Shown here in pieces: positions 4,874 through 59,507 of a stretch of DNA of 64,000 nucleotides. The notes under the pieces were generated by a model that was not told where the DNA came from, did no database searches, and saw nothing but the letters and a program-made list of their open reading frames with translations. The DNA comes from Octopus bimaculoides (taxonomy: Eukaryota): contig NC_068996.1 of the NCBI RefSeq assembly GCF_001194135.2, positions 49,474,577 through 49,538,576 of the forward strand, in the 5' to 3' direction. A program made the position numbers and the translations under genes. The first letter of the stretch is position 1. Each line of letters opens with the position of its first letter.

Positions 4874-6010
4874 GTCTGCGTGCATGTGTAATGTGTTGAA
4901 AAACAAAACAAAATATCCATTAGCTTAGACGATATTTCGATACAATTACTTTAAACTAGAAGCTAAAAAACATTATTCCTAATTTACACTATTACTTATG
5001 ATAAATCAAAATATCATTAACAGTATTTAATCACTTAAGAAGTTTATTATAAGTCATCCAGCTGCAATCTAGAAACCATAGTTAAATAATAGAATATTAT
5101 TATTATTATTTTATTTTAAAAACCATATTTATGTACATGTAATATTTTAATATTTTCATTATGTATTTGTGTGTGTGTTAATGTGTTGAAAGCTACAAGA
5201 TGATCACGAATCAAAACTGTTTACTAATTATGATAACTGAATATTACATCAACATTTGTGTGCAATATATTTGTTTATGTAATATTGTGAACACATACAC
5301 ACAGGCTTAATTGAGGAAAGCACTAACGTTAGCAAATGAAAATTAATGAAATTAATAAAAATTAAAACCATTATTGAATTAATACGTAATATCTTTAACT
5401 TAAGTTTACCAATTATCTTTTAAAATATATTAATCACAGATTCAGAAGATACATGCTTAAATCAAAATCCTTTTAACCTTTATATAATACAGTTACCCGC
5501 AAATAAAACCTTATGTCAATATTTACCATTTATTTTATATTTTAATATTAATATGATATTTACTAAGAATTATCTAATCTTTATGGTTAAAATTGTTAGT
5601 ATATTAATCCTGAGATACCGTGTAAATTTATAGTCCTGGTAACTTTTATATTGTATATAATGGTAGTTTTTGAAAACATATTTATAGGCATGAACACAGG
5701 ATAACACCCCTTCCTTCTTGTGTTAAGAAGTAGAAGTCTACGTTAGGAATTTAAGATTTGATATAATTCTTCTATGCAAAGAAAACAAAAGGCATTGCCA
5801 ATTTTATAGACATTAGTTCTGCTTATTAATTCCCATTCCACAGTAAGCATTTTATTCTTGTCCTTTAAGTCCCAAATAAATTTACTAAGACTGGTATAAG
5901 ACAACTTATTTTTATTATTAAATGTGTAATTGTTATAAGCAATACATTTTTTGATATAGTTTTGCGTAGCACTGATGTAAAAGAAATTCTTACTTTCAGA
6001 ATCACTGCGG

Positions 6011-6047
<37 letters not shown>

Positions 6048-7541
6048 TAGTTATTAAATCAACAGTTATTTCCATCTTTGCAATCACAATATATATTTTT
6101 CTATTCATATTACTATTGTGATTTATATAATTAGATTCAGTATGATTGTTATTTACAGCGTTACTTCTATTCTTCAGGCTAAGATGGGACTTAAAGTGGG
6201 TTGTTTTCCCTTGTACATTTGAAGAATTATTTAATCATTTTTCACTAACCTTATTTCCTAGAGTATTATTGTTGCATTTAATCGGGTAATTATTTTTATA
6301 AAAATTTAATAATTTCCTTTCATTGAGGAAAGAAATAACCTGAGACATATTCTTCAAAATGGAAAAAGCGAGACAGAGGTAAAATGTTTGGAAAATAGTT
6401 TGTATAAAGATCCGACTAAATTGTTCTTAACTTGTTTAGCGAATGGAATAATGAGCCAAATAATATTATTCTTATCAGAAGGTACATTATAATTTTCAAA
6501 TTTTTTAATCTTACTATATTTATACAGGAATGTCTTTTAATTCTATTATTCCTATTACTAATTTCATGAGTATTATCTGATGTACGATGCAATAAATTGG
6601 TTTACATATTTTGCATAGCATTGTTATCTAAAAGACGTTTATTCTTTTCATTTTTCCTATCCTTATTTCTATTTCTATTAGAGCCTTTAAAATTATAGTT
6701 ACTATGAGTAACTCCTATGTTACTAGAGCCACCATGGTCGACATTTTGTGCATAATACTTTAACTTAAGGCTATACCCAGCTTTGCTGAGGGCCATATTA
6801 TAATAGTCAGCATTTTTGTTAAAAATATCCTTATTAGATGATAAATTAGATATTCTTCTAGAAATATTGTAAACTAAGAAATTTTTTACAGAACTGGGAT
6901 GATTACTTCCAATATTTATATACTTAAGATTGGAGTTAGGCTTGTGGAATGGTTCATAGTTGCCTGTAATGAGGTTTAGGTTAACATCTAGGAAGTTAAC
7001 CAATTCATGTTCATTTTCAATTGTTATGGAATGCCCAAAATTTTTTAAAAACCTTTAAAATTTCTTCTTGTACAGCTCTAATTTTCTACTTGATAGTTTT
7101 CTAATAGTAAAAAGGGCATCATCCCTATATAAACCTCCCACAAGTTCAGGAAAATCCCTTTCTAAGATAAATATAAATACCTGCTAAATGAGTAACTTGG
7201 GTAGAATATGTGGAACCCATAGCAATATTAAAGACATCACAACTATCTTTCTTAATCCAATACTGGTTTTCAAACTCTATAACTGTTTTTCTGGTAGCTA
7301 ATATGACATTAATTTCTCCCTTATTCAGATTCGGGTTGTTTCTCACAAACAAAAGGGCCTTGTTTAAAACTACTTGGTTAATCAAAGAATAATAACTATC
7401 AATATCTATTTGTATAAACTTGTTTCTACTTTTGTATTTAATGCTGTTAAACCAATTTATTACTTTGTGGATATTAGACCAAAGTTGTAACCTTATCTTT
7501 TCCTTAAGGAGCAGTATGTGCTTATCTAAAATAACCTTACT

Positions 7542-7571
7542 TAACCCTAACCCTAACCCTAAGCCTAACCC
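7542..7571 (-). repeat. Interstitial telomere-like (TTAGGG)n tract inside the PLE RT
   Basis: taaccctaaccctaaccctaagcctaaccc. Confidence 0.8.
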
Positions 7572-8226
7572 AAGTCAAATTTTCCTGGGCAAATCAATCT
7601 TACTTTAGGGTTTCCTTAAAAGTTGTCTTTATGATCCTTTAAAATAAACCTAGGTATTTTAGGAACAAAAGTTTCAGATATGTCATCCAAACTGTAATTC
7701 TCCATTATCTGTTTGGATATTAAGTTGGTAGTTCTAAATATTTTTTTTTTTAGTTATTTTGTAACTTTTAGTAATTTCTTTTTTTAATACTTCATGGTAA
7801 TAATTTATTTCCAGATTATACAAATTGCCAGTCTTGTCTGAGTGTACAATTATCCCGTTTTTCCTTTTAAGTTCCGATACAAAAGATTTAAGCTTCCTCA
7901 ATTGCTCATTTCCTCTGTGGGAGTATTTCTTAATTTTAACATTTTTAATAATTTTCCACAGTTCGTCCTCAAAGCTGGCAAGGTGACTATTTGGTGGTGG
8001 GTATTTTTTAGTCCTAAAAACTTTTAATAGTTGATCAGTCTCTTTGGTTTTGCTATTTATCTGTGTATCCATTTTCTTGTCAAAATAAAATGCCTTCCAG
8101 CTGAGTCTATGGATGAATTCAGCTGTTTTATGAATTAGATCCTCTATGTAGGTCCTCAGATGGAAGGCATTTTATTTTGACAAGAAAATGGATTCACAGA
8201 TAAATAGCAAAACCAAAGAGACTGAT

Positions 8227-11275: not shown

Positions 11276-11770
11276 TACATTTAATATAATGAATCTGCAG
11301 ATCCTAAATCAATTTGGGTGGACGTTCTTAATATACTGCGTTTCGTGTCACTTTGAATAAACGAATACCCATCCTTGGAACTGTCTTTCTTATAAGCGTC
11401 AATTACTAGGGTCGATTCAATCAACTACCACCCCCACCCACTCCTAAAATTGCTGGACTTGTACCAAAATTGAAACAATTTCTGAAGACTTGCAAAATTA
11501 TTAGAATATTGAATAAAATGTCCTCCAGTTTTTCTTGTGGCATTTTATTGTTCAGAGTTCAAAAACCCATTAGGTCAACTATGCCTTTCATTTTTTCAGG
11601 GGTCAATGAAAGTACTAGTTAAATACTGGGGGTTAATGGTATCAACTTAACCCATCCTTCTGAAATTGCTAGACCTTAGGTGGTGAATTGACAGAATTGT
11701 TCAAGCATTGAAAAGAACAAAATTACTTTGTAGAATTTGTTCCTTGGCTATGATTACATATTATATTATT

Positions 11771-12061
11771 GACTATCGACACACAGTCTGTGTCCATATA
11801 GTGTTTGCAAGGGTGGTCATTGCTCCCATTTCCTGCCTTATATGATACTCTTCTATATACAAGATCAGTGACTGTGTGTCGCTTAAAGAATTATATATAG
11901 TGTTTGCGAATGGAGAAAGCTTTCATCAACAGCCAGTGATTGTCTCACACAGAGGATAACCACCCAGAAACCACGGTCTGTGAGTATCACGTAAGGCTGG
12001 AGACAGGAGCAATGACCTCCCTTGCAAACACTGTACAGACACAGACTGTGTGTCAATAGCC
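11771..12061. mobile_element. MITE-like fold-back element with 56-bp terminal inverted repeats
   Basis: 11771-11826 matches the reverse complement of 12006-12061 with about 6 mismatches; no TSD is evident. Confidence 0.5.
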
Positions 12062-12492
12062 AGCTGGAAACATAGTCCTTTATAGGACCACCACATTCTG
12101 TTGGCAAATAAACTTTACTATTCAGTACTGTTACTGTATATCTATCGCTGAGAGATTAAAAACAAGTTGTTTTTCTCTATATTATATATTGACTTCTAAA
12201 ATCTTCGACTGCATTAGTTTCACTGATTGCAAGCACAAAAAAAAAGAGCAAAAAAAGTGCATGTGTTGATGATAGTGGTATTGGTGGGAGAGTGGATGGG
12301 TGGGTGGAGGAAAGACTGCCCTACCCACACAATAGCCAAGGCGAAGATTAAGACCAAGAACAAAGTTGACAAGATACATCATAAAGTTTTCAATGCTATT
12401 GCAATTCTTGTTTCTGTAAACAATGGGTTTTTTTTTTTAATAATAAATGTGTGGCAGCAGCAGCAGCAGTAGCAGTAGTAGTAGTAAAGGTG

Positions 12493-13814: not shown

Positions 13815-15131
13815 TCCTTTTGACATAAACAGATGATGCAATTTCAGTCACTGCTTATCATGGTTATAAACAAACAGAAGCAAACACACACACATACATA
13901 CTAGCCATATATGTGTATATTTGCTGTGTGTGTATGTGTATGTGCAGCTATGGCTGTTTGGTTATGAAGTCAGGTTCTGGACCATACAGTTTCTGGTCTT
14001 GTCTTGGTGTTGAACATTTGGCAAGTGTCATCTCCTACAAATCTGATTTAACTGAAAACTTGTAAGTGAATTTGGTGGATGGAAACTGAAAGACAAAGTG
14101 CATCCACGCGTGTGTGTGTGTGTGTCAAAGCTAGCCTTCTGCGTTGTTTCAGTCAAACACTGCTTAGAAAGCATTGGCCAACCTGAAGCAACTCAAGATA
14201 CTGTAGTCAAGACATTTGCTTAAGGTATTGTGCAGTGGGACTATCACAAAACAAACCGGTTTTAGATTGAACCGCTTAACCACATGGCAATATACATTAT
14301 TGATGCACTTAATATATTTAACCTTTTAGCATTTAGATTACTCTGTCAAATGTAATGCACAGGACCTGAAATTTTAGGGGAGGGGTATAGTCAATTACAT
14401 TGGCCCCAGTACTCAACTGGTACTTAATTTATTGACCCCAAAAGGGATGAAAGGCAAAGTTGACCTCAGCAGAATTTGAACTCACAATGTGAAGATGGGG
14501 AAAATGCCACTAAGTATTTTACCTGATGTGCTAATGATTCTCCCACCTCGCCACCTTAATAATAATCATCATCATCATCATCATCATCATCGTTTAACGT
14601 CCGCTTTCCATGCTAGCATGGGTTGGACGATTTGACTGAGGTCTGGTGAAACCAGATGGCTACACCAGGCTCCAATCTAATTTGGCAGAGTTTCTACAGC
14701 TGGTTCAAATTTTGGCACAGTTGGCCTCAACAGAATTTAAACTCAGAATGTAAAGAGTTAGAAGAATTACCATTAAGCATTTAGTATTATTTTAGTAATT
14801 TGAATTATTTATGAATAAAAGTTCTGTGGGACTTTATTGGAACCTTATTTGTTCATACACAACTGTGTATATTACCAATTATCCTGGTGATAAAGCATCA
14901 CAAATGTTAATCATCTAAAGTCAGCAGCAGCAGCAGCAGCAGTAGTAGTATGAGGAACTGCACTGTAATAATGCATCACTGCAACCACCATTTGTTGGTG
15001 ATTCTCTACTTTTCCTAGCAGAGGACACCTCTGCACCACTCACGCAACAACCCTCCAACCCATGGGTCTGTTTGGGTAGTCATTGCTGGTTAAGGGTTTT
15101 ACGAGGTCAGAGTGCAAATCATACTGGAACT

Positions 15132-16068
15132 TCTTTTAATCCCTTTTTACAACACACATTGGGTCTATTCTTTGATATACTGGTCTCCACGGATCACTAG
15201 AACAACATAAAATGAAGTTTAGAAGTAATGCATTTCTAAATCTCTCAGAGAGATTTATGCAGTAGCGATGCGATAAAGTAGTTGTATGCTGTCAACTTAA
15301 TGTGACAGTCCCCTGAAGGGAATAATACTACTGTTGGTTAGCCCTAGGAAGCTGCACCGCTTCCTGTCGGCCTTGACACATTTCCTGTGTACTTATGTTT
15401 GCAAGGGGGAGACAAGCACCTCCACCCAGCTAAGCCTGCATCCAGAGACATGTTTCTGAGTCTTTGCTTGTCATCAGTTCTATTTTTGAAATCAGTGAAT
15501 GTGTTCAATAGAATTATTATATGTTTACGAGAGCTTGACAGGCATCTCCAACTAGCAGGCCATTGCTGCTCCAGACTGATGATGAGCAAAGACTCAGAAA
15601 CATGTCTCTGGATGCAGGCTTAGCTGGGTGGAGGTGCTTGTCTCCCCCTTGTAAACATAAGGACACAGGAAATGTGTCAAGGCCGACAGGAAGCGGTGCA
15701 GCTTCCTAGGTCTAAACAACAGTAGTATTATTCCCTTCAGGGGACTGTCACATTAAGTTGACAGCATACAACTACTTCATCGTATCACTACTGCATAAAT
15801 CTCTCTGAGTGATTTAGAAATGTATTATTTCTAAACTTCATTTTATGTTCTAGTGATCCGTGGAGACCAGTATATCAAAGAATAGACCCAATGTGTGTTG
15901 TAAAAAGGGATTAAAAGAGGTGTGCTTGTCTCCCCCTTGTAAACAAAAGGACACAGGAAATGTGTCAAGGCTGACAGGAAGCGGTGCAGCTTCCTAGGTC
16001 TAACCAACAGTAGTATCATTCCCTTCAGGGGACTGTCACATTAAGTTGACAGCATACAACTACTTCAT
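15132..16068 (+). mobile_element. Fold-back non-autonomous element with a hammerhead ribozyme (PLE pLTR- or retrozyme-like)
   Basis: Inverted arms 15132-15478 and 15575-15918 (12 substitutions plus one 3-bp indel by my count), a 96-bp spacer, and a direct re-copy of 15634-15780 at 15922-16068. The hammerhead sits at the spacer/right-arm junction. Confidence 0.75.
15566..15617 (+). ncRNA. Minimal type I hammerhead ribozyme
   Basis: CTGC-TCCAGA (stem I), CTGATGA core, TGAG-caaaga-CTCA (stem II), GAAAC-AT-GTC (palindromic ACATGT stem III, GUC triplet, predicted cut after 15606), then TCTGGA-t-GCAG (stem I partner). Confidence 0.8.
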
Positions 16069-17183
16069 AAAATGAAGTGTTTAGCTCAATAACACATTCT
16101 ACTATCCAGTTTGGGAATCAAACCCACAATCTGGTGATCATGAATGCAACACCTTAACCACTAGGTTACACACCTCCACATCATCTAAAGCAATGGTTCT
16201 CAACCATATTTTTTTACGTTTGGTCCCCTTTGATTCTTATTTTGCTTAGATAGACTCTCCTAGCCATTCGATGTTTAAAAAAATCCTTTTGTATTTTTTT
16301 TATTATTAAATATTATAANNNNNNNNNNNNNNNNNNNNNNNNNNNNNNNNNNNNNNNNNNNNNNNNNNNNNNNNNNNNNNNNNNNNNNNNNNNNNNNNNN
16401 NNNNNNNNNNNNNNNNNNNNNNNNNNNNNNNNNNNNNNNNNNNNNNNNNNNNNNNNNNNNNNNNNNNNNNNNNNNNNNNNNNNNNNNNNNNNNNNNNNNN
16501 NNNNNNNNNNNNNNNNNNNNNNNNNNNNNNNNNNNNNNNNNNNNNNNNNNNNNNNNNNNNNNNNNNNNNNNNNNNNNNNNNNNNNNNNNNNNNNNNNNNN
16601 NNNNNNNNNNNNNNNNNNNNNNNNNNNNNNNNNNNNNNNNNNNNNNNNNNNNNNNNNNNNNNNNNNNNNNNNNNNNNNNNNNNNNNNNNNNNNNNNNNNN
16701 NNNNNNNNNNNNNNNNNNNNNNNNNNNNNNNNNNNNNNNNNNNNNNNNNNNNNNNNNNNNNNNNNNNNNNNNNNNNNNNNNNNNNNNNNNNNNNNNNNNN
16801 NNNNNNNNNNNNNNNNNNNNNNNNNNNNNNNNNNNNNNNNNNNNNNNNNNNNNNNNNNNNNNNNNNNNNNNNNNNNNNNNNNNNNNNNNNNNNNNNNNNN
16901 NNNNNNNNNNNNNNNNNNNNNNNNNNNNNNNNNNNNNNNNNNNNNNNNNNNNNNNNNNNNNNNNNNNNNNNNNNNNNNNNNNNNNNNNNNNNNNNNNNNN
17001 NNNNNNNNNNNNNNNNNNNNNNNNNNNNNNNNNNNNNNNNNNNNNNNNNNNNNNNNNNNNNNNNNNNNNNNNNNNNNNNNNNNNNNNNNNNNNNNNNNNN
17101 NNNNNNNNNNNNNNNNNNNNNNNNNNNNNNNNNNNNNNNNNNNNNNNNNNNNNNNNNNNNNNNNNNNNNNNNNNNNNNNNNNN

Positions 17184-20131: not shown

Positions 20132-20335
20132 TTATTGATAATGCATTGTATGACTCTTGAGTCCGGTCAAAGATTTACACATTCTATTGCATAATGCACG
20201 ACAGTGCTGGCTGGCAGAGGGAACAGGTACCATAGTATGAATTCTTTTGACATGCTTTTTCAATCCTCCAGCTGAGAGGCACATCTTTCCACATATTGCA
20301 CATGTTCTGTTGTCAACAATAGCCAAATCACAATT
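20132..20335 (-). mobile_element. C-terminal C2H2-finger remnant of a second RTE-type LINE
   Basis: CAICGKMCLSAGGLKKHVKRIH and ALCNRMCKSLTGLKSHTMH followed by a stop. The CKSxxGLKSH pattern resembles RTE ORF ends, and there is no TGEKP linker. Confidence 0.6.
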
Positions 20336-20422
20336 TACACACACGCAAACACACATAAATACACATACACACATGCATATATACACACTTATGCACGTGT
20401 GTGTGTATGCGTGTTTATATAT

Positions 20423-21972
20423 ATCATCATCATCCTTGTCATCGTTTAACGTCCGCTTTCCATGTTGGCATGGGTTGGATGGATTGACTGAGGACTGGTG
20501 AGCCAGATTGGCTGCACCAGGCTCCAATCTGATCTGGCAGTTTCTACAGCTGGGTGCTTTTATGTGCCACCGGCACAAAGGCCAGTCAGGCAGTACTGGC
20601 AATGGCCACGCTCAAATGGTGTTTTTTGCGTGCTACCTGCACAAGAGCCAGTCCAGCAATGACTGGCAACGACCTTACTCGAATGTTTTGTTCACGTGCC
20701 ACCAGCACAAGTGCCAGTAAGGCGACACTGGTAACAATCACGCTCGAATGGTGCTTTTTATGTGCCACCAGCACGGGAGCCAGTCAGCAGCCCTTGCAAC
20801 GATCACGCTTGGATGGTGCCCTTAGTGCTCCTCTAGCACAGATGCCAGTCATGCAGTGCTATCATCAAATTTGATTTCGATTTCACTTGCCTGAATAGGT
20901 CTTCTCAAGCAGAGTTTAGTGTCAAATGAAGGAAAGTGGGATGGTTACACCCACTGGCATAGGCCACAGGTTATGGTCTCACTTGGCATGCCGGGTCTTC
21001 TCAAGCACAGCATATTTCCAAAGGTCTCAGTCACTAGTCATTACCTTGGTGAGGCCTAATGTTCGAAGGTCATGATTCACCACCTCATCCCATGTCTTCC
21101 TGGGTCTACCTCTTCCACAAGTTCCCTCTACTGCTAGGGCGTGACACTTTTTCACACAGCTATCCTCATCTATTCTCACCACATGACCATACCAGTGCAG
21201 TCGTCTCTCCTGCACACCACAACTGATGCTTCTTAGGTCCAACTTTTCTTTCAAGGTACTTACACTGTCAAGTATGCACACTGACATTACTCATCCATCG
21301 GTGCATACTGGCNNNNNNNNNNTGCTTCTTAGGTCCAACTTTTCTTTCAAGGTACTTACACTGTCAAGTATGCACACTGACATTACTCATCCATCGGTGC
21401 ATACTGGCTTCATTCCTTGCAAGCTTACACATGTCCTCAGCAGTCACGGCCCATGTTTCACTGCCATGTAGCATGGCTGTTCGCACATATGCATCGTATA
21501 ATCTACCTTTTACTCTGAGTGAGAGGCCCTTTATCACCAGCAGAGGTAAGTGCTCTCTAAACTTTGCCCAGGCTATTCTTATTCTAGCAGCTACACTTTC
21601 AGAGCACCCACCCCTGCTACTGACTTGGTCACCTAGGTAACAGAAGCTATCAACTACTTCTAGTTTTTCTCCCTGGAATGTGACAGAAGTTGTTCTCTGC
21701 ACATTTTCAGTGTTTATTGCTCCTGAACATCAGTCACATACAAAAACTGACTTCCTAGTTAACCTGCCTTTGATATTGCTGCACCTCTTATGTGTCCATA
21801 GCTTACACTGGATACATCTTATAGAGTTTCTACCTATGCCTTTTCAATAGATCGAGCAGGGCCATCTACCTGAAGGGGTTTGTGGTTTGTTTGCCTTCCT
21901 ACTTATTAAGACTTTGCTTATAGCTAAGTTGACTCTAAGGCCCTTCAATTCTAATCCTTGCTTCCACTTATA
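20423..21972 (-). mobile_element. 5'-truncated RTE-clade LINE (RT C-terminal half + 3' UTR), degenerate
   Basis: Minus translation: KWKQGLELKGLRVNLAISKVLI, a Cys-rich insert, LEVVDSFCYLGDQV...RIRIAWAKFRE...AMLHGSETWAV, RRLHWYGHVVR...GRGRPRKTWDEVV. The 3' UTR has ~65-bp subrepeats and a (GAT)n tail. Confidence 0.92.
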
Positions 21973-23973: not shown

Positions 23974-26244
23974 GTGCGTTACCTGTGTAAACCTTGTCTT
24001 ACATTTTTTCTACCTGTTTCACTCATGATGGAATATCAATTTGAAGGATTTAGTTAAATAAACTGACTCTAGTTACTTTATTTATTTAAGTCTCGTACTT
24101 ATTATACCAGTTTCTTTTGCTGAAATCATTACATTTCAGGGACGTAAGCAAACCAACTCTGGCAGAAACGTTAGCACGCCGGGCGAAATGCTTAGCGGTA
24201 TTTCGTCTGTCTTTATGTTCTGAGTTCAAATTCCGCCGAGGTCGACTTTGCCTTTCATCTTTTCGGGGTCGATAAATTAAGTACCAGTTATGCACTAGGG
24301 ACAATGTAATCGACTTAATCCCTTTGTCTGTCCTTGTTTAGCCCCTTGTGGGCAATAAAGAAATAAGAAACACCATCGCTTGACAACTGGTGTTAGTGTG
24401 TTTGCATCCCCATAACCTAGCAGTTCAGCAAAAGAAACTGATAGAATAAGTACTAGGCCGAACACCAGCTTAATAACAGCAGTTATTTTACTAAATTCCT
24501 CATTTTTTTTTACTAAATTCTTCATTATTTTCACGACTAATTGAAACAAAGGTTGTGTATTCCAACACAAACACAGTTTGCTTAACAAAAAACCCTTCAA
24601 GGCAGTGCCCCCGCATGGCCGCAGTCTAATAACTAAAAGATAGAAGATAAAGTTGGGGCCGTATTGTATTGTTTTCTGAGGGTCGCACTGGTTCTGTTTC
24701 ATTTTGTTTTAATACTATTAGTCAACTAGTTAACTATCATATTGGATGACACCGTATTTTTTTTTTGTTTCTTTTTTAAATGTCTCAAAAAAATCTTCAA
24801 TACATTGAAAATCATGTTCAAAATTATAGCTATGTAATATTCAAAGTCACAGCTATGTTAAATGCTATAAATGCACTGAAACCATTTTTCTCTTGAATTG
24901 GGCTGCATCTAATATGCATATGAGTCTTTTGTGCCATTCAGATATGGTAATGGTAATTAATCAATTGCTTGATTAGTCATTTGATCCATCAATCACTTAG
25001 TTGATTGATCTAGTGATAAGTCAAACACTTGTTTAAAAAAGGTTGGGGGGACACACACACACGCGTATATGACGTGATTCTTTCAGTTTCCGTCTAGCAA
25101 ACCCACTCAAAAGGCTTTGGTCAGCCCTGGGCTACAGTAGAAGACACTTGCTTAAGATACCACACAGTGGGACTGAACACAAGATCATGTGGTTGGGAAG
25201 CAAATTTCTTAACTACACAACCACTCCTGCGTCCATAAATGCTTTGTTTGAAAAAAAAAAACGAAAGTGTATAAAAGAAATACAACTGCACAATGATAAA
25301 ACAAATTGTTGATGTTTTCCTTCTCTTTTGCAATAAAAGAGATAATATTTAATTTAATTATTAATAATGGATAATACAAACTGGATTAGAAATACTACCC
25401 TTATATAAAAGGCCAGTCTTCGGGTACATCTGCGTACTTCTAAATAATAAATTGTTCAAGGGAAATAACTACGTGCTTCCTAAATCGAGAAGTTTTCAGT
25501 ACAATTGTTATTTCATACCAAATTATATTTGAAATATCCTATTTGCACTGTTTGAGCAAGGATTCGTATAAAAATTACCAATTTTGTAAAGCTTAGAGCT
25601 TTAGCTTTGGTTGTATGCGTGTAGATTCTGCCAGCTCGCTTCCTTAATAATAATAGTGATAATAATAAAAGAATACAGGAGTCATTTCAACTTAACAATA
25701 GAGTAGTTTTAGGGATAATTAACAATTATTTAAATATTACATTAACTAGCTGTCTCTTGTGTACTTGCCAAAATACTTGAAAAGATATTTAGTCATTTTG
25801 TTATTATTATTTTTTTTTGTATGTGTGTGTGTGTGTATTTTGTCTTTTCCTCTCTATTCAATAATTTCTAATTATTTTTCAATACTGTTTCGTTTTTGTA
25901 TTTTGCTTAAGATGTTTGTTGTGAACTCGAGTGTTGAAACAAACTTTGCTGTGTCTTGGGAGGGTCATTATGCCAATGATAAATACATGCACTGGTTGCA
26001 TATTACTTTATATTTTATTTGTCATTTGATTAATTAACCAATTAACTCAGATGTCACTGAGTTCCATTTTTTATCATCATCATCATCATCATCATTATTA
26101 TATTTCACATTCTAGGGTCCAAATGCTACCAAGGTCGACTTTGATTTTCATCCTAAATAAGTACCAGTTGAGTACTGGGGATCAATGGAATCGACTTATC
26201 CCGTACCCACCAAAATTTCAGGCCTTGTGTCTAAAGAAGAAAGG

Positions 26245-44597: not shown

Positions 44598-47500
44598 CCG
44601 TTGGACTGGCTCCTGTGCAGGTGGCACGTAAAAACACCATTTGAGCGTGGCCGTTGCCAGTACCGCCAGACTGGCCCTTGTGCTGCTGGCACGTAAAAGC
44701 ACCCACTACACTCTTGGAGTGGTTGGCATTAAGAAGGGCATCCAGCTGTAGAAACTCTGCCAGATCAGATTGGAGCCTGTGTAGCCATCTGGTTCACCAG
44801 TCCTCAGTCAAATCATCCAACCCATACTAGCATGGAAAGCGGACGTTAAACGATGATGATGTAGAGAGAGAGAGGGGGGGGGATAAAGATCCTTCTTGAG
44901 TTATAGAGATTCACAGGGCAATTTTCACAGTTTCTGTGGCACATGTTTCCCCACTTAAACTGGATGGTTCTCTGTCGCAGGATTCCTCAATTTTGCCAGC
45001 TGAGTAGACCTGGAGCAATGTGTTGGTTTAAAAAAACTGCACATCACTCAGTCCAGGAATTGAAATCACAATCTTACAATCATGAGTCCAACACCGTAAC
45101 CACTAAGCCACATGCCTCTACATACATGTGTGTGTATGTGTGCATACCTGTGTATTTATGTGTCTTTTTGTGTGCGTCTCACATGACCGCTTGACAACTG
45201 GTGTTTGTTTGTTTACATCCCTGTAATTTAATGATTTGACAAAAGTGAAAGACTTAAAAAGTGAATACTAGGGTTGATTTGTTCAACTGAAAATTCTTCA
45301 AGGTGGTGCCCCAGAATGGCTGAAACAAGGAAAAGATAACAGATAAAACAATGTGGAATTATTTAGCCATTTTCAATAAGCTCAGACCCTTTTTAAAATT
45401 CTTCAAGTGGTTGAAAAAAATTTGAAATAATTCAAGTGATTGGAAGAATTCTTTAAAAATCCAAGAACTCTGTTGAACCATAATGGTGATTACAACTACT
45501 TTACTGTTTTAGCCTTTTGTTACCATATTTCTTTTGGAACCACATTGCCTCCATTTCTATTGATCTGAAAATGGTTAAAACTTTGTTTCCTTATCAAATG
45601 GTTCTGGGTTCAGCCCCACTGCATGGTATATTGGGCAAGAGTCTTTAACTATAGCCTTAGGCTGACCAAACACTTGTGAGTGTATTTCGTAGGCAGAAAG
45701 TGAATCAATCCAGTTGTGTGGAGTCTGGACAGCTTGCCAGCCCCATGTCAAACTGTCTAACTCATGCCAACTGGTGTTGGTTTGTTTATATCCCCATAGC
45801 TTAGTTCAGCAGAAAGAGAACAATAGAATAAGTACTAGGCTTGGAAAGAAATATGTTCTGCAGTTGCTTTGTTTGACTAAACCAATGGTCCTTAACTGGG
45901 TGTCCATATGGCCCTTGGTGGGGACCCATACAAGATTTTGTTGTTAAAATTTATCTGCAATAGATTGGTTATTCTGCTACAATAATGTTCTTAATTTTAT
46001 TTATGCAATTCATTATAATATTTAATTATAAAAATACAGTGGGATTATTTTTATAAAATAGGAATCAAGAGGGTTCATAGATCTATGTGTGGGGGTCTTT
46101 GTGTCTGTGTTTGGCCCCTCCCCTTCCCACTTGAAGACTGGTGTTGGTCTGTTTATGTCCCCCATAACTTAGCGGTTTGGCAAAAAAGAAAGATAAATGA
46201 TAGAATAAGTGCCAGGCTTTAAAAGAAAATAAAAAAGGTTGGGGTCAATTCATTTGACTAAAAATTCTTCAAGGTGGTACCCCAGCATGGCCACAGTCAA
46301 ATGACTGAAAATGGTAATTAGTAAATCTGGTAAAATAACTTTGACAGTTATTTTAATAATAAGCTAACGTTTTATTCTTTTACTTGTTTCAGTCATTTCA
46401 CTGTGGCCATGCTGGAGCACTGCCTTTAGTAGAACAAATCAACCCCAGGACTTATTCTGTCTGACTCTTTTGCCAAACTGTTAAGTTATGGGGATGTAAA
46501 CACAACATCGGTGTCAAGCGATGGTGAGGGGGCAAACACACACACACATGAATATATACATGTATGTGATGTCCTGTACCCAGATATGCATCTATATATA
46601 CATGTAGATGTAGGTATGTACATACATGTACGTATATATGCATATACTCACATATTATTTGTATTATTATTATTATTATATATATATATATANNNNNNNN
46701 NNNNNNNNNNNNNNNNNNNNNNNNNNNNNNNNNNNNNNNNNNNNNNNNNNNNNNNNNNNNNNNNNNNNNNNNNNNNNNNNNNNNNNNNNNNNNNNNNNNN
46801 NNNNNNNNNNNNNNNNNNNNNNNNNNNNNNNNNNNNNNNNNNNNNNNNNNNNNNNNNNNNNNNNNNNNNNNNNNNNNNNNNNNNNNNNNNNNNNNNNNNN
46901 NNNNNNNNNNNNNNNNNNNNNNNNNNNNNNNNNNNNNNNNNNNNNNNNNNNNNNNNNNNNNNNNNNNNNNNNNNNNNATATTTACCATAAAGGCATTACA
47001 AAAAGGGGACGAACAAGGACAGACAAACATAAAAGGGGTGAAGTAGCTGTATCCATTAAATATTTACAATTTTAAATACACAATAAAAATTGGATTATAT
47101 TTACAATGTTCGATTGAAGCATTGCTCATTACAGATGCAATTTGTAATGGCTTTCCTGAAGGATAGGCAACCGACCACCAGGGTAGACCCCTTGCTTTTT
47201 CTTTCCCTTGTTTTCACACAGCCACTCCTGCACCTGAACATAAATTAACAATAAAATTTAACTGTTGAAGGTTTTTACTTTAGGTCACTTTGTAAGAAGT
47301 TTGTATCATAGAGATGACCACCTTCCCCATCCCTCACCCCAGGTTGTTTGGAATGAATGGGGTCAATCCCTTATAACTAGTAACCAGGGCATACCACATG
47401 GAATGTCCTTCTTTAAATGATGATGATATATGAAATCTTTAAACCTTGGCTATGGCTGTAAGTTGTAGTTTCCTTATATATGAAACACTTTGTCCCTGCA

Positions 47501-55856: not shown

Positions 55857-56195
55857 AAGGCACATGGCTCAGTGGTTAGAGTATCGGGTTCACAATCACG
55901 AGGTAGTGAGTTTGATTCCCAGACTGGGCTGTGTGTTGTGTTCTTGAGCAAGACACCTTATTTCACATTGCTCCATTTCATTCAGCTGTAGAAATGAGTT
56001 GCGATGTCACAGGTGCCAAGCTGTATCGGCCCCTTTGCCTTTCCCTTGGACAACATTGGTGGTATCGAGAGGGGAGGCTAGTATGCATGGGCAACTGCTG
56101 GTCTTCCATAAACAACCTTGACCAGACTTGTACCTAACTTTCTATGTGCAATCCCATGATCAGTTATGACCGAAGGGGGGTCTTTACCCTTTGTA
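55857..56195 (+). mobile_element. tRNA-headed SINE family D
   Basis: GGCACATGGCTCAGTGGTTAGAG...GTTTGATTCCC head, then TTCTTGAGCAAGACACCTTATTTCAC. A minus-strand relative lies at ~57313-57628, with fragments at 41850-42050, 42830-42965 and 44940-45120. Confidence 0.8.
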
Positions 56196-56579
56196 TCTTA
56201 GTTAATGTGAATCTATGCAGAAAGCCACAAAACTGGATTTTCATCTTGAGAAAGCATTTCATATAGACATATGATGCTAAACAGTACAAGAGTTTATCAG
56301 AAGCAGGCACAAAAACATCCAACAGTAGCAGTGGAAATATTAACGAACCAATACTGCTTCTATCACTATAATAATGAATTTTTACCCAGCCCACCAACTA
56401 TTTACAACACCAGTGATTTGTTAATCACTTTTTCCTATATCAGAGGAAGCTAAATCTGTCTAAGTATGCCATTGCAAGTGGATAAATGCTATTGATGATG
56501 TGCAAAGACGCAGAAATCCAGACTTAACAATTCTATTGCCAGTACTGGATGTTAAGATATACAGAATGATACATGTCTC

Positions 56580-56764
56580 TTATCGTTTACTTGTTTCACT
56601 CATTGCACTGTGGCCATGCTGGGGCACCACCTTGAAGGGTTTTAGTTGAACAAATCAATCCCAGTATATCTTTTATCTTTTACTTGTTTCACTCATTGGA
56701 CTGTGACCATGCTGGGGCACCACCTTGAAGGGTTTTAGTTGAACAAATCAATCCCAGTATATCT
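56580..56764 (-). repeat. 93-bp tandem satellite, same unit in inverse orientation (runs into a gap)
   Basis: Period 93 (56591/56684); nearly identical to the 18.8-19.6 kb unit. Confidence 0.8.
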
Positions 56765-59305: not shown

Positions 59306-59507
59306 AGCGCCAGGTGAAATGCTTAGCGGTATTTCGTTTGCCGTTACGTTCTGAGTTCAAATTCCGCCGAGGTCGACTTTGCCTTTCATCCTTTCGGGGT
59401 CGATAAATAAAGTACCAGTTACGCACTGGGGTTGATGTAATCGACTTAATCCCTTTGTCTGTCCTTGTTTGTCCCCTCTGTTTAGCCCCTTGTGGGCAAT
59501 AAAGAAA
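59303..59507 (+). mobile_element. SINE family B
   Basis: GAAATGCTTAGCGGTATTTCG...GAGTTCAAATTCCGCCGAGGTCGACTTTGCCTTTCATCCTTTCGGGGTCGATAAA..GTACCAG; the central block recalls the Meta/MESC SINE domain (from memory). Other copies lie at ~585-795, 870-1070, 14360-14560, 24159-24368, 26300-26460, 29807-30035, 30410-30780, 31435-31650 and 38040-38490. Confidence 0.85.

What the first reader, a model, noticed from the sequence alone, without database searches (positions are those of the whole stretch)
15132..16068. Fold-back element with an intact minimal hammerhead ribozyme at its turn
Seen: ~345-bp inverted arms (~96% identical), a 96-bp spacer and a 147-bp partial tandem re-copy. A full type I hammerhead spans the spacer/right-arm junction (stem I TCCAGA/TCTGGA plus CTGC/GCAG, CUGAUGA, 4-bp stem II, GAAAC-AU-GUC). 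The left arm stops just upstream of the core and so lacks proper stem I; its caag versus the right arm's tgag implies an ancestral CpG. Known: Penelope-like element pLTRs and metazoan retrozymes carry minimal type I hammerheads with palindromic stem III that cleave as dimers, and PLE insertions show inverted and partial-tandem ends. Inferred: a non-autonomous, self-cleaving cephalopod retroelement mobilised by a PLE RT, whose transcript would also form long dsRNA.
Basis: partly seen in the sequence, partly recalled or inferred. Interest (0 to 1): 0.85.

Follow-up and report, generated by a model that had tools for sequence, protein, structure and literature searches.

The report
Hammerhead-bearing short retroposon in fold-back arrangement
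The fold-back is real and carries a genuine but sub-consensus hammerhead ribozyme motif; it is one decaying copy of a roughly 440-base non-coding retroposon family of an already known kind (Penelope-related, retrozyme-like), so it is a nice example rather than a new type of element.

Summary
Arms 15129-15478 and 15575-15921 are 95.4% identical. A 96-nt stretch separates them, and 15922-16068 is a 147-nt partial re-copy of 15634-15780. One complete type I hammerhead motif lies at 15570-15612 (+), with the predicted cut after 15606.

New findings:
- The "spacer" is not filler. Its right 55 nt form a long imperfect helix I, so the core caps a ~140-nt hairpin.
- The window holds a second, older copy at 11852-12250 with its own upstream inverted arm (11770-11850), and a third relic at 56398-56580.
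- The copies share a 5' start, and the full copies share an A-rich 3' end. This defines a ~443-nt unit with no ORF.
- Helix I covaries between the young and old copies: 7 two-sided changes in 32 comparable pairs.

Weaknesses:
- The motif scores half of Rfam's threshold and has U10.1-A11.1 instead of G-C.
- Its minimal palindromic helix III would need a partner, and no partner exists at this locus.
- It would be buried in a 350-bp hairpin if the whole locus were transcribed.
- The older copies have dead cores.

Cleavage, PLE mobilisation, genome-wide copy number and the cephalopod origin could not be tested.

Verdict: a new member of a known kind, of modest interest.

The parts
15479..15921 (+). 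Full unit of the young copy (~443 nt, no ORF): 5' leader, hammerhead hairpin, body, A-rich 3' end ...AAAAGAGGT
   Evidence: Homologous over its whole length to 11852-12250 (nhmmer; alignments). The 5' start is shared with 56398. The 3' end is shared by both arms and by the old copy.
15479..15519 (+).
   Evidence: Conserved in the old copy (11851-11895) and in the third relic (56398-).
15520..15575 (+). 5' strand of a long imperfect helix I
   Evidence: About 75% complementary to 15607-15660: score 44 against 26.6 +/- 4.0 in shuffles, with 2 of 1000 reaching it. It is paired in the MFE fold.
15576..15606 (+). Hammerhead core: CUGAUGA, helix II UGAG/CUCA with loop CAAAGA, GAAA, palindromic helix III ACAUGU, C17. 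Predicted cut at 15606/15607.
   Evidence: Sequence. Descriptor scan. Hammerhead_HH9 at 25.9 bits, E 5.4e-5, in a 91-nt search.
15607..15659 (+). 3' strand of helix I
   Evidence: Covaries with the old copy.
15129..15478 (-). Inverted copy of the unit's 3' 347 nt. It is truncated 1 nt 5' of CUGAUGA, so it has a core but no helix I.
15922..16068 (+). Partial direct re-copy of 15634-15780, lacking the ribozyme. It is joined at GAG/GTG microhomology.
   Evidence: A three-way comparison gives L-specific 4, R-specific 1 and T-specific 3 differences.
11852..12250 (+). Older, diverged copy of the same unit. Its core is decayed: CAGAGGA, a 4-nt deletion in helix II, GAAAC and GUC kept. Helix I is CUCACA/UGUGAG.
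   Evidence: nhmmer E 2.2e-7. Alignments. Hairpin fold at z -3.7. No Rfam hit.
11770..11850 (-). Inverted partial copy that abuts the 5' end of the older unit
   Evidence: 81 nt, 85% complementary to 11982-12062. No further arm lies upstream.
56398..56580 (+). Third, rearranged relic: the shared 5' start, GCCATTGC, and core UUGAUGA-UGUG-CAAAGA-CGCA-GAAAU. Another repeat follows at about 56581.
   Evidence: nhmmer E 0.012. blastn gives 24 nt at 92% on the core. Alignment. Sequence. Weak evidence.

Best explanation
The locus is a decaying insertion of a short (~443 nt), non-coding, hammerhead-bearing retroposon family. The family is of the PLE-pLTR / non-LTR-retrozyme kind.

Structure of the unit: a 41-nt leader; a ~140-nt hairpin whose apex is a type I hammerhead; a ~260-nt body; and an A-rich 3' end (AAAAGARGT).

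How the master elements would work (inferred). The ribozyme would cut the transcript after GUC, as a dimer through the palindromic ACAUGU helix III. This trims multimeric or read-through RNA before reverse transcription by an enzyme supplied in trans, most likely a Penelope-like RT/GIY-YIG protein.

How the fold-back arose (inferred). The inverted 350-nt arm and the 147-nt re-copy were made during integration by template switching. The three 'b' segments are about equally diverged, and the joints show microhomology. This is the complex inverted/partial-tandem layout described for PLE-type insertions.

Status of this copy. At this locus the ribozyme is almost certainly a relic. There is one complete motif with no partner, the closing pair is U10.1-A11.1, and a read-through transcript would bury it in a 350-bp duplex.

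Shown: the anatomy, the family membership of three copies, the shared ends, and helix I covariation. Inferred: cleavage, dimerisation, the mobilising enzyme, and the integration mechanism.
For: - Repeat geometry.
- Complete core and helices, unique in the window; 0 strict hits in 1500 random sequences.
- Full-length alignment to Hammerhead_HH9.
- The hairpin 15515-15665 folds at -68.4 kcal/mol, z -7.8. The old copy's hairpin has z -3.7.
- Of 32 comparable helix I pairs, 23 are the same, 7 are changed on both sides and 2 on one side. By fixed register, three compensatory pairs fall within the 6 bp next to the core.
- The plus strand folds better than the minus strand (-68.4 vs -54.4), with 5 G.U pairs.
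- The second and third copies share the 5' leader, and the second shares the 3' end.
- No ORF or protein relative in any frame.
- The old copy also has an inverted piece abutting its 5' end.
- A PLE-like RT/GIY-YIG remnant lies in the same window at 5743-8072(-).
- Literature. HHRs sit in PLE repeats, and dual motifs 100-700 bp apart on opposite strands have been reported (PMC4209133). PLE insertions show 5' truncation, partial tandems and an adjacent inverted copy (PMC8557442). Non-LTR retrozymes derive from pLTRs and occur as monomers (bioRxiv 10.64898/2026.07.22.740005).
Against: - The motif scores below Rfam's gathering threshold.
- G10.1-C11.1, called highly conserved in PMC4209133, is U-A here.
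- The older copies have mutated cores (U4>A plus a helix II deletion; C3>U), so there is no evidence of selection on the core after insertion.
- Helix I complementarity could be kept by DNA-level palindrome regeneration rather than by RNA selection. The G.U versus A.C bias is 8:3, which is not significant.
- No RT ORF is linked to the element, and it shares no sequence with the PLE or LINE remnants in the window.
- The tandem piece lacks the ribozyme, unlike true retrozyme arrays.
- The old copy's inverted arm lacks the 3' terminus expected of a PLE-style inverted copy.
- The A-rich 3' end would also fit LINE-mediated retroposition.
- No target-site duplication was found.
- Only three copies, all from one window, could be compared.
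Confidence: 0.6

Rival explanations
1. These are 5'-truncated 3' ends (the pLTR/3'UTR region) of an ordinary autonomous Penelope-like element, laid down head-to-head with a partial tandem. There is no separate non-autonomous family.
For: The inverted, truncated and partial-tandem layout is the published hallmark of PLE insertions, and the HHR lies near PLE 3' ends (PMC8557442; PMC4209133). The left arm is truncated inside the ribozyme.
Against: Three copies begin at the same 5' sequence, TCTAT..ATCAGTGA. This is not expected from random 5' truncation. No coding remnant lies upstream of any copy. The ribozyme has the 6-bp/4-bp canonical architecture rather than the long-helix-II min-HHR described for most metazoan PLEs.
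Confidence: 0.18
2. The transposing unit is itself a fold-back. The master carries both arms, its RNA is a long hairpin, and copies are 5'-truncated from the outside.
For: Both full copies have an inverted arm joined to the same leader. The old copy keeps only the inner 81 nt of its arm and lacks the outer part, as 5' truncation of a fold-back would give.
Against: In the young locus the left arm, the right arm and the re-copy are about equally diverged (4, 1 and 3 private changes). This fits creation in one event. The inner ends of the two arms differ: one stops at the core edge, the other 3 nt past the cut site. The third relic has no arm. A 350-bp perfect hairpin RNA is a poor RT template (my own knowledge).
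Confidence: 0.12
3. It is a LINE-mobilised SINE-like repeat, or a chimera with the adjacent tRNA-SINE. The hammerhead-like motif has no role, and its complementarity is a by-product of an internal palindrome.
For: The 3' end is A-rich. LINE RT-like fragments and many SINEs are in the window. A tRNA-derived SINE head with A and B boxes abuts the element at 16066-16190(-). The motif is below the Rfam threshold, and the cores of the older copies are decayed.
Against: All 13 core positions, three helices and a palindromic helix III together did not occur in 1500 random windows. Compensatory changes sit directly against the core. The unit has no B box. It shares no sequence with other SINE or LINE copies in the window.
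Confidence: 0.08
4. It is a DNA-level event: a foldback/MITE-type DNA transposon with long terminal inverted repeats, or a replication-based inverted duplication.
For: The arms are long and near-perfect.
Against: No target-site duplication of 6 nt or more was found. The structure is asymmetric, with a one-sided re-copy. The old copy has full right-hand sequence but only an 81-nt left arm. The A-rich end is oriented.
Confidence: 0.03

Closest known systems
Non-LTR retrozymes of metazoans (Cervera & de la Pena 2020, PMC7229834; Li, Clavereau & Pollet 2026 preprint 10.64898/2026.07.22.740005)
   Same: - Short unit (443 nt), low GC (42%) and non-coding.
- Type I hammerhead with 6-bp helix I, 4-bp helix II and a very short palindromic helix III that implies dimeric action.
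- Occurs as dispersed monomers.
- Proposed dependence on PLE machinery.
   Different: - There is no head-to-tail array in which every unit has a ribozyme. The only tandem piece here lacks it.
- The closing pair of helix II is U-A.
- Helix I extends to about 55 bp.
- An inverted partial copy abuts the 5' end in both full copies.
- circRNA is untested.
Minimal hammerheads in Penelope-like element pLTRs (Cervera & de la Pena 2014, PMC4209133) and complex PLE insertions (Craig et al. 2021, PMC8557442)
   Same: - The ribozyme sits in a repeat that occurs in inverted and partial-tandem arrangements.
- 'Dual' motifs on opposite strands about 100 bp apart are reported there.
- Helix III is palindromic.
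- Most genomic copies are solo and truncated.
   Different: - No RT/GIY-YIG ORF is attached.
- Helix II is 4 bp rather than 6-8 bp.
- There is no unpaired nucleotide before a G10.1-C11.1 pair.
- The unit has a defined 5' end.
Schistosoma Sm-alpha, newt satellite 2 and cricket pDo500 hammerhead repeats (cited in PMC4209133 and PMC2837043)
   Same: Short, abundant, non-coding genomic repeats with type I hammerheads. Some act as dimers.
   Different: Those are tandem satellites or pol III SINE-like units. This unit has no B box and no regular tandem.

Membership tests
Hammerhead ribozyme, type I | Conserved core CUGANGA ... GAAA ... UH, in type I order, with helix I open | tested here: met
   15576-15606 read directly. 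Descriptor hit. Core columns all match in the HH9 alignment.
Hammerhead ribozyme, type I | Helices I and II formed and supported by covariation | tested here: inconclusive
   Helix I has 7 two-sided changes in 32 pairs against the old copy. That rests on only two sequences, and a DNA palindrome could mimic it. Helix II is 4 bp here, broken in the left arm and in the old copy, and kept with a U.G pair in the third relic.
Hammerhead ribozyme, type I | G10.1-C11.1 closing pair of helix II | tested here: not met
   U15583-A15596. The pair is described as highly conserved in PMC4209133. Compensated exceptions exist in crickets (PMC2837043).
Hammerhead ribozyme, type I | Reaches the Rfam gathering score | tested here: not met
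   No hit at gathering thresholds. HH9 scores 25.9 bits against 52.
Hammerhead ribozyme, type I | Self-cleavage after H17 | not testable with these tools
   Needs in vitro transcription of monomer and dimer constructs.
Non-LTR retrozyme | Head-to-tail tandem units, each with a hammerhead | tested here: not met
   Only 15922-16068 is tandem, and it starts 27 nt after the cut site, so it has no ribozyme. Monomeric derivatives are, however, recognised in the 2026 preprint.
Non-LTR retrozyme | Short, low-GC, non-coding unit | tested here: met
   443 nt and GC 0.42. No ORF longer than 81 aa, and no protein relatives.
Non-LTR retrozyme | Expressed as circular RNA | not testable with these tools
   No transcriptome data are available here.
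Penelope-like element | ORF with RT and GIY-YIG endonuclease | tested here: not met
   None in or next to any of the three copies. An unrelated PLE-like remnant lies 7 kb away.
Penelope-like element | Insertion layout: 5' truncation, partial tandem, adjacent inverted copy | tested here: met
   compared with the description in PMC8557442.
tRNA-derived SINE | Internal pol III A and B boxes in the unit | tested here: not met
   There is only an A-box-like 11-mer with 1 mismatch at 15621-15631, and no B box. The true A/B pair belongs to the neighbouring SINE at 16114-16168(-).
Foldback/MITE DNA transposon | Terminal inverted repeats flanked by a target-site duplication | tested here: not met
   No shared k-mer of 6 nt or more at the flanks. 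The structure is asymmetric.
MIR7533 microRNA precursor (Rfam RF04209) | Reaches the family's gathering score | tested here: not met
   95.9 bits against 230. The match is driven only by the long hairpin.

The most novel reading that the evidence does not exclude
The family may be a hairpin-driven retroposon. In that reading, the long helix I that carries the hammerhead at its apex promotes snap-back or template switching during reverse transcription. New insertions would then regularly acquire an inverted partner and become sources of long dsRNA, which could feed endo-siRNA pathways or serve as ADAR substrates. Helix I of the ribozyme may itself have arisen in this way.
Probability: 0.12. Interest if true: 0.6.

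Novelty: new member of a known kind. Interest (0 to 1): 0.3.

Why it matters
If confirmed genome-wide, this family would add a molluscan, probably cephalopod, lineage to the hammerhead-bearing, PLE-dependent short retroposons. It would provide a family with a defined unit, an unusually long helix I and a recurrent inverted partner. That combination is useful material for asking how PLE-type integration makes inverted copies, and whether such loci feed dsRNA pathways. By itself this locus is a decayed copy, and it does not change current understanding.

Tried and rejected
1. Fishing for other copies through the protein database, using translations of the arms. A 48-aa ORF across the ribozyme found nothing. 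A 560-aa chimera of all open segments in six frames also found nothing.
2. Exact look-ups of window ORFs to identify the source genome. Searches were all 'not on record'. The organism therefore remains unverified.
3. Exact and degenerate hammerhead patterns in the metagenome, viral and prokaryote collections. Searches gave 0 hits. One search gave four loci with no helix I, which are irrelevant.
4. Supplements of PMC8557442 for cephalopod PLE consensus sequences. None are held.
5. Looking for the parent PLE in the window. The RT/GIY-YIG-like remnant at 5743-8072(-) shares no sequence with the unit. Its 3' region has no Rfam hammerhead. A hand-read HHR-like motif in the pLTR-like repeat of its relative L001 got no Rfam support either, so I do not rely on it.
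6. Insertion into the neighbouring SINE. The left flank does not continue the SINE, so this is rejected.
7. MIR7533. This is a generic hairpin match.
8. An RNA-editing signature between the arms. Five T>C changes against one C>T are too few to interpret.
9. The two copies 3.6 kb apart as the two pLTRs of one PLE. This is rejected. They are about 25-35% diverged while the young arms differ by 4.6%, and there is no ORF between them.

Full report
**The observation**

The region was read directly. The repeat finder and blastn confirm two inverted arms, 15129-15478 and 15575-15921. The alignment is 350 nt at 95.4% identity, with 13 substitutions and one 3-nt indel. The arms are 96 nt apart. A direct partial re-copy at 15922-16068 matches 15634-15780 (147 nt, 97.3%).

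On the plus strand the sequence reads UCCAGA / CUGAUGA / UGAG-CAAAGA-CUCA / GAAA / C-AU-G / UC | UCUGGA, followed by a bulged U and CUGC/GCAG pairing. This is the order and core of a type I hammerhead, with the cut predicted after C15606. The left arm carries the same core on the minus strand but ends 1 nt before CUGAUGA. It has nothing to form helix I and no Rfam signal.

**Is the motif more than chance?**

I wrote a min-HHR descriptor requiring helix I of at least 5 bp, helix II of at least 3 bp, and a palindromic insert between A15.1 and U16.1.
- It finds exactly this one site in the window.
- It finds none in 1500 random 57-kb sequences of the same dinucleotide make-up. A relaxed version gave 9 hits in 1500.

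Rfam is less generous.
- Nothing reaches gathering thresholds in the window.
- In a 1.2-kb search the only hit is MIR7533, at 95.9 bits against a threshold of 230. That is a generic long-hairpin match.
- In a 91-nt search the motif aligns end to end with Hammerhead_HH9 at 25.9 bits against 52, E 5.4e-5. All core columns match. Helix III is deleted, and U-A stands where the model has G-C.

Cervera & de la Pena (PMC4209133) list G10.1-C11.1 as highly conserved, so 'intact' overstates the case.

**The spacer is part of the element**

The right 55 nt of the 'spacer' (15520-15574) are about 75% complementary to 15607-15660. The local score is 44 against 26.6 +/- 4.0 in shuffles, and 2 of 1000 shuffles reach it.

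Positions 15515-15665 fold into one long hairpin with the catalytic core at its apex.
- The free energy is -68.4 kcal/mol, z -7.8.
- The plus strand folds better than the minus strand (-54.4), and it uses 5 G.U pairs.

**More family members in the window**

The first blastn pass found no other copy. nhmmer did.
- An older copy lies at 11852-12250 on the plus strand. It aligns to the unit over its whole length at roughly 65-75% identity.
- A weak third relic lies at 56398-56580. It has E 0.012, a 24-nt 92% match on the core, and shares the leader and a GCCATTGC block.
- All three start with TCTAT(T/A)T..A(T/C)CAGTGA.
- The two arms of the young locus and the old copy all end in AAAAGA(G/A)GT or an A-rich equivalent. 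The sequences diverge beyond that point.
- Together these define a ~443-nt unit. It has no ORF longer than 81 aa and no protein relatives in any frame.

The old copy folds into the same long hairpin (z -3.7). It also has an inverted piece abutting its leader: 11770-11850 against 11982-12062, 81 nt at 85%. No further arm lies upstream.

**Covariation and decay**

The 6 bp next to the core are UCCAGA/UCUGGA in the young copy and CUCACA/UGUGAG in the old copy. All six pairs are kept, and three are changed on both sides.

Over the whole helix, 32 comparable pairs give 23 unchanged, 7 changed on both sides and 2 changed on one side.

There are three cautions.
- Only two sequences are compared.
- A DNA-level process that regenerates the palindrome would give the same pattern.
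- The bias of G.U over A.C mismatches on the plus strand is 8:3 across both copies, which is not significant.

The cores of the older copies are dead.
- The old copy has CAGAGGA (U4>A) and a 4-nt deletion in helix II, and it gets no Rfam hit.
- The third relic has UUGAUGA and a rearranged 3' half.

This is what neutral decay after insertion predicts. It says nothing for or against function in the master elements.

**The CpG inference**

The right arm has TG and the left arm has CA at 15583-4. That is the classical two-way decay of a CpG. CpG o/e is 0.26 in the element and 0.42 in the window.

The other copies have TG and TA, which is compatible but not decisive. A CG ancestor would put C.A at the 10.1-11.1 position. 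In that case the 4-bp helix II of the right arm could be an accident of decay.

**How the fold-back arose**

Among the three 'b' segments, the private differences are 4 (left arm), 1 (right arm) and 3 (re-copy). This fits one event. The re-copy joins at GAG/GTG microhomology. No target duplication of 6 nt or more was found.

Published work describes this layout.
- Craig et al. (PMC8557442) describe PLE-type insertions as 5'-truncated, in partial tandems, and often with an inverted 5'-truncated copy against the 5' end.
- Cervera & de la Pena report dual min-HHRs 100-700 bp apart on opposite strands.
- A 2026 preprint (10.64898/2026.07.22.740005) derives animal non-LTR retrozymes from PLE pLTRs and recognises monomeric derivatives.
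- The hammerhead here has the 'canonical metazoan' 6-bp/4-bp architecture with a short palindromic helix III. The literature associates that architecture with dimeric action.

**What this locus would do**

A transcript of the whole locus folds into a ~350-bp duplex at -700 kcal/mol, which absorbs the ribozyme. There is only one complete motif, so no cis dimer can form. The 75-nt motif alone is not unusually stable (z -0.15). I conclude that this copy's ribozyme is a relic. The dsRNA potential is real but untested.

**The mobilising enzyme**

The window holds a frameshifted RT/GIY-YIG-like remnant at 5743-8072(-), with DKT-G, YRDD, FLDV..SNHP and C..C..E motifs.
- It matches ~700-aa proteins at E down to 7e-62. 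Their sequences show the same motifs, although Pfam gives no hit for them.
- It shares no sequence with the unit.

PLE mobilisation therefore remains an inference. The A-rich 3' end would also suit a LINE.

**Limits**

No eukaryotic genome collection was available. Pattern scans of the metagenome, viral and prokaryote collections found nothing relevant. Look-ups of window ORFs gave no source record. Copy number, consensus, linkage to an RT and the cephalopod origin are therefore untested. For context, the giant squid genome paper reports 235 Hammerhead_1 matches and Penelope elements (PMC6962438), so hammerheads in cephalopod genomes are not new.

**Verdict**

This is a new member of a known kind, most likely an inactive copy. 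Interest is modest: 0.3.

Noticed in passing
window 5743-8072 (-): A frameshifted remnant of an RT plus GIY-YIG-like ORF with DKTG, YRDD, FLDV..SNHP and C.LC..E motifs. It matches ~700-aa proteins from marine metagenome and transcript contigs (E down to 7e-62, 31-41% identity). Pfam gives no hit for those proteins. It is likely a Penelope-like element, and it is unrelated in sequence to the hammerhead unit.
   Followed up: partly
window 16066-16190 (-): A tRNA-derived SINE head with an A box (16168-16158) and a B box (16124-16114). It abuts the end of the 147-nt re-copy with CAT microhomology. Its 3' part is missing and is not found on the other side of the fold-back. Related heads lie at 55871-55963 (-) and 45056-45123 (+).
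   Followed up: partly
window 15400-15653 (-): Rfam MIR7533 matches the fold-back at 95.9 bits (threshold 230). This is an example of long-hairpin miRNA models matching any inverted repeat.
   Followed up: yes
window 16319-17183 and 15 other N runs: The window holds 6656 N in 16 gaps. One 865-nt gap starts only 250 nt to the right of the element, so its right-hand context is incomplete. Complex inverted or tandem insertions are known to break short-read assemblies.
   Followed up: no
window 11541-11653, with at least 9 other places (e.g. 59348-59452, 24212-24321, 14404-14483): An abundant short repeat. One copy lies just upstream of the old hammerhead copy and may have removed the outer part of its inverted arm.
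   Followed up: no
window 56581-56760 (+): Two tandem copies of another abundant repeat (TTACTTGTTTCACTCATTG.ACTGTG.CCATGCTGGGGCACCACCTTGAAGGG) follow the third hammerhead relic. The same repeat recurs across the window.
   Followed up: no
window 15129-15921, arm differences: Of 9 transitions between the arms, 5 are T (right arm) against C (left arm), and only 1 goes the other way. This is too few to tell whether it means anything, for example an edited RNA template.
   Followed up: partly
window 20132-20602 (-) and 21364-21702 (-): One ORF has a C2H2 zinc-finger hit (zf-met, E 2e-5). A 112-aa ORF looks like the C-terminal part of a LINE RT, but it has no Pfam hit.
   Followed up: partly
L001 1-93 and 2402-2492: The closest relative of the window's PLE-like ORF (a Tara metagenome scaffold) carries a direct repeat on both sides of the ORF, like a pLTR. 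A hand-read hammerhead-like core there (CUGAAGA...GAAAC) received no Rfam support.
   Followed up: partly
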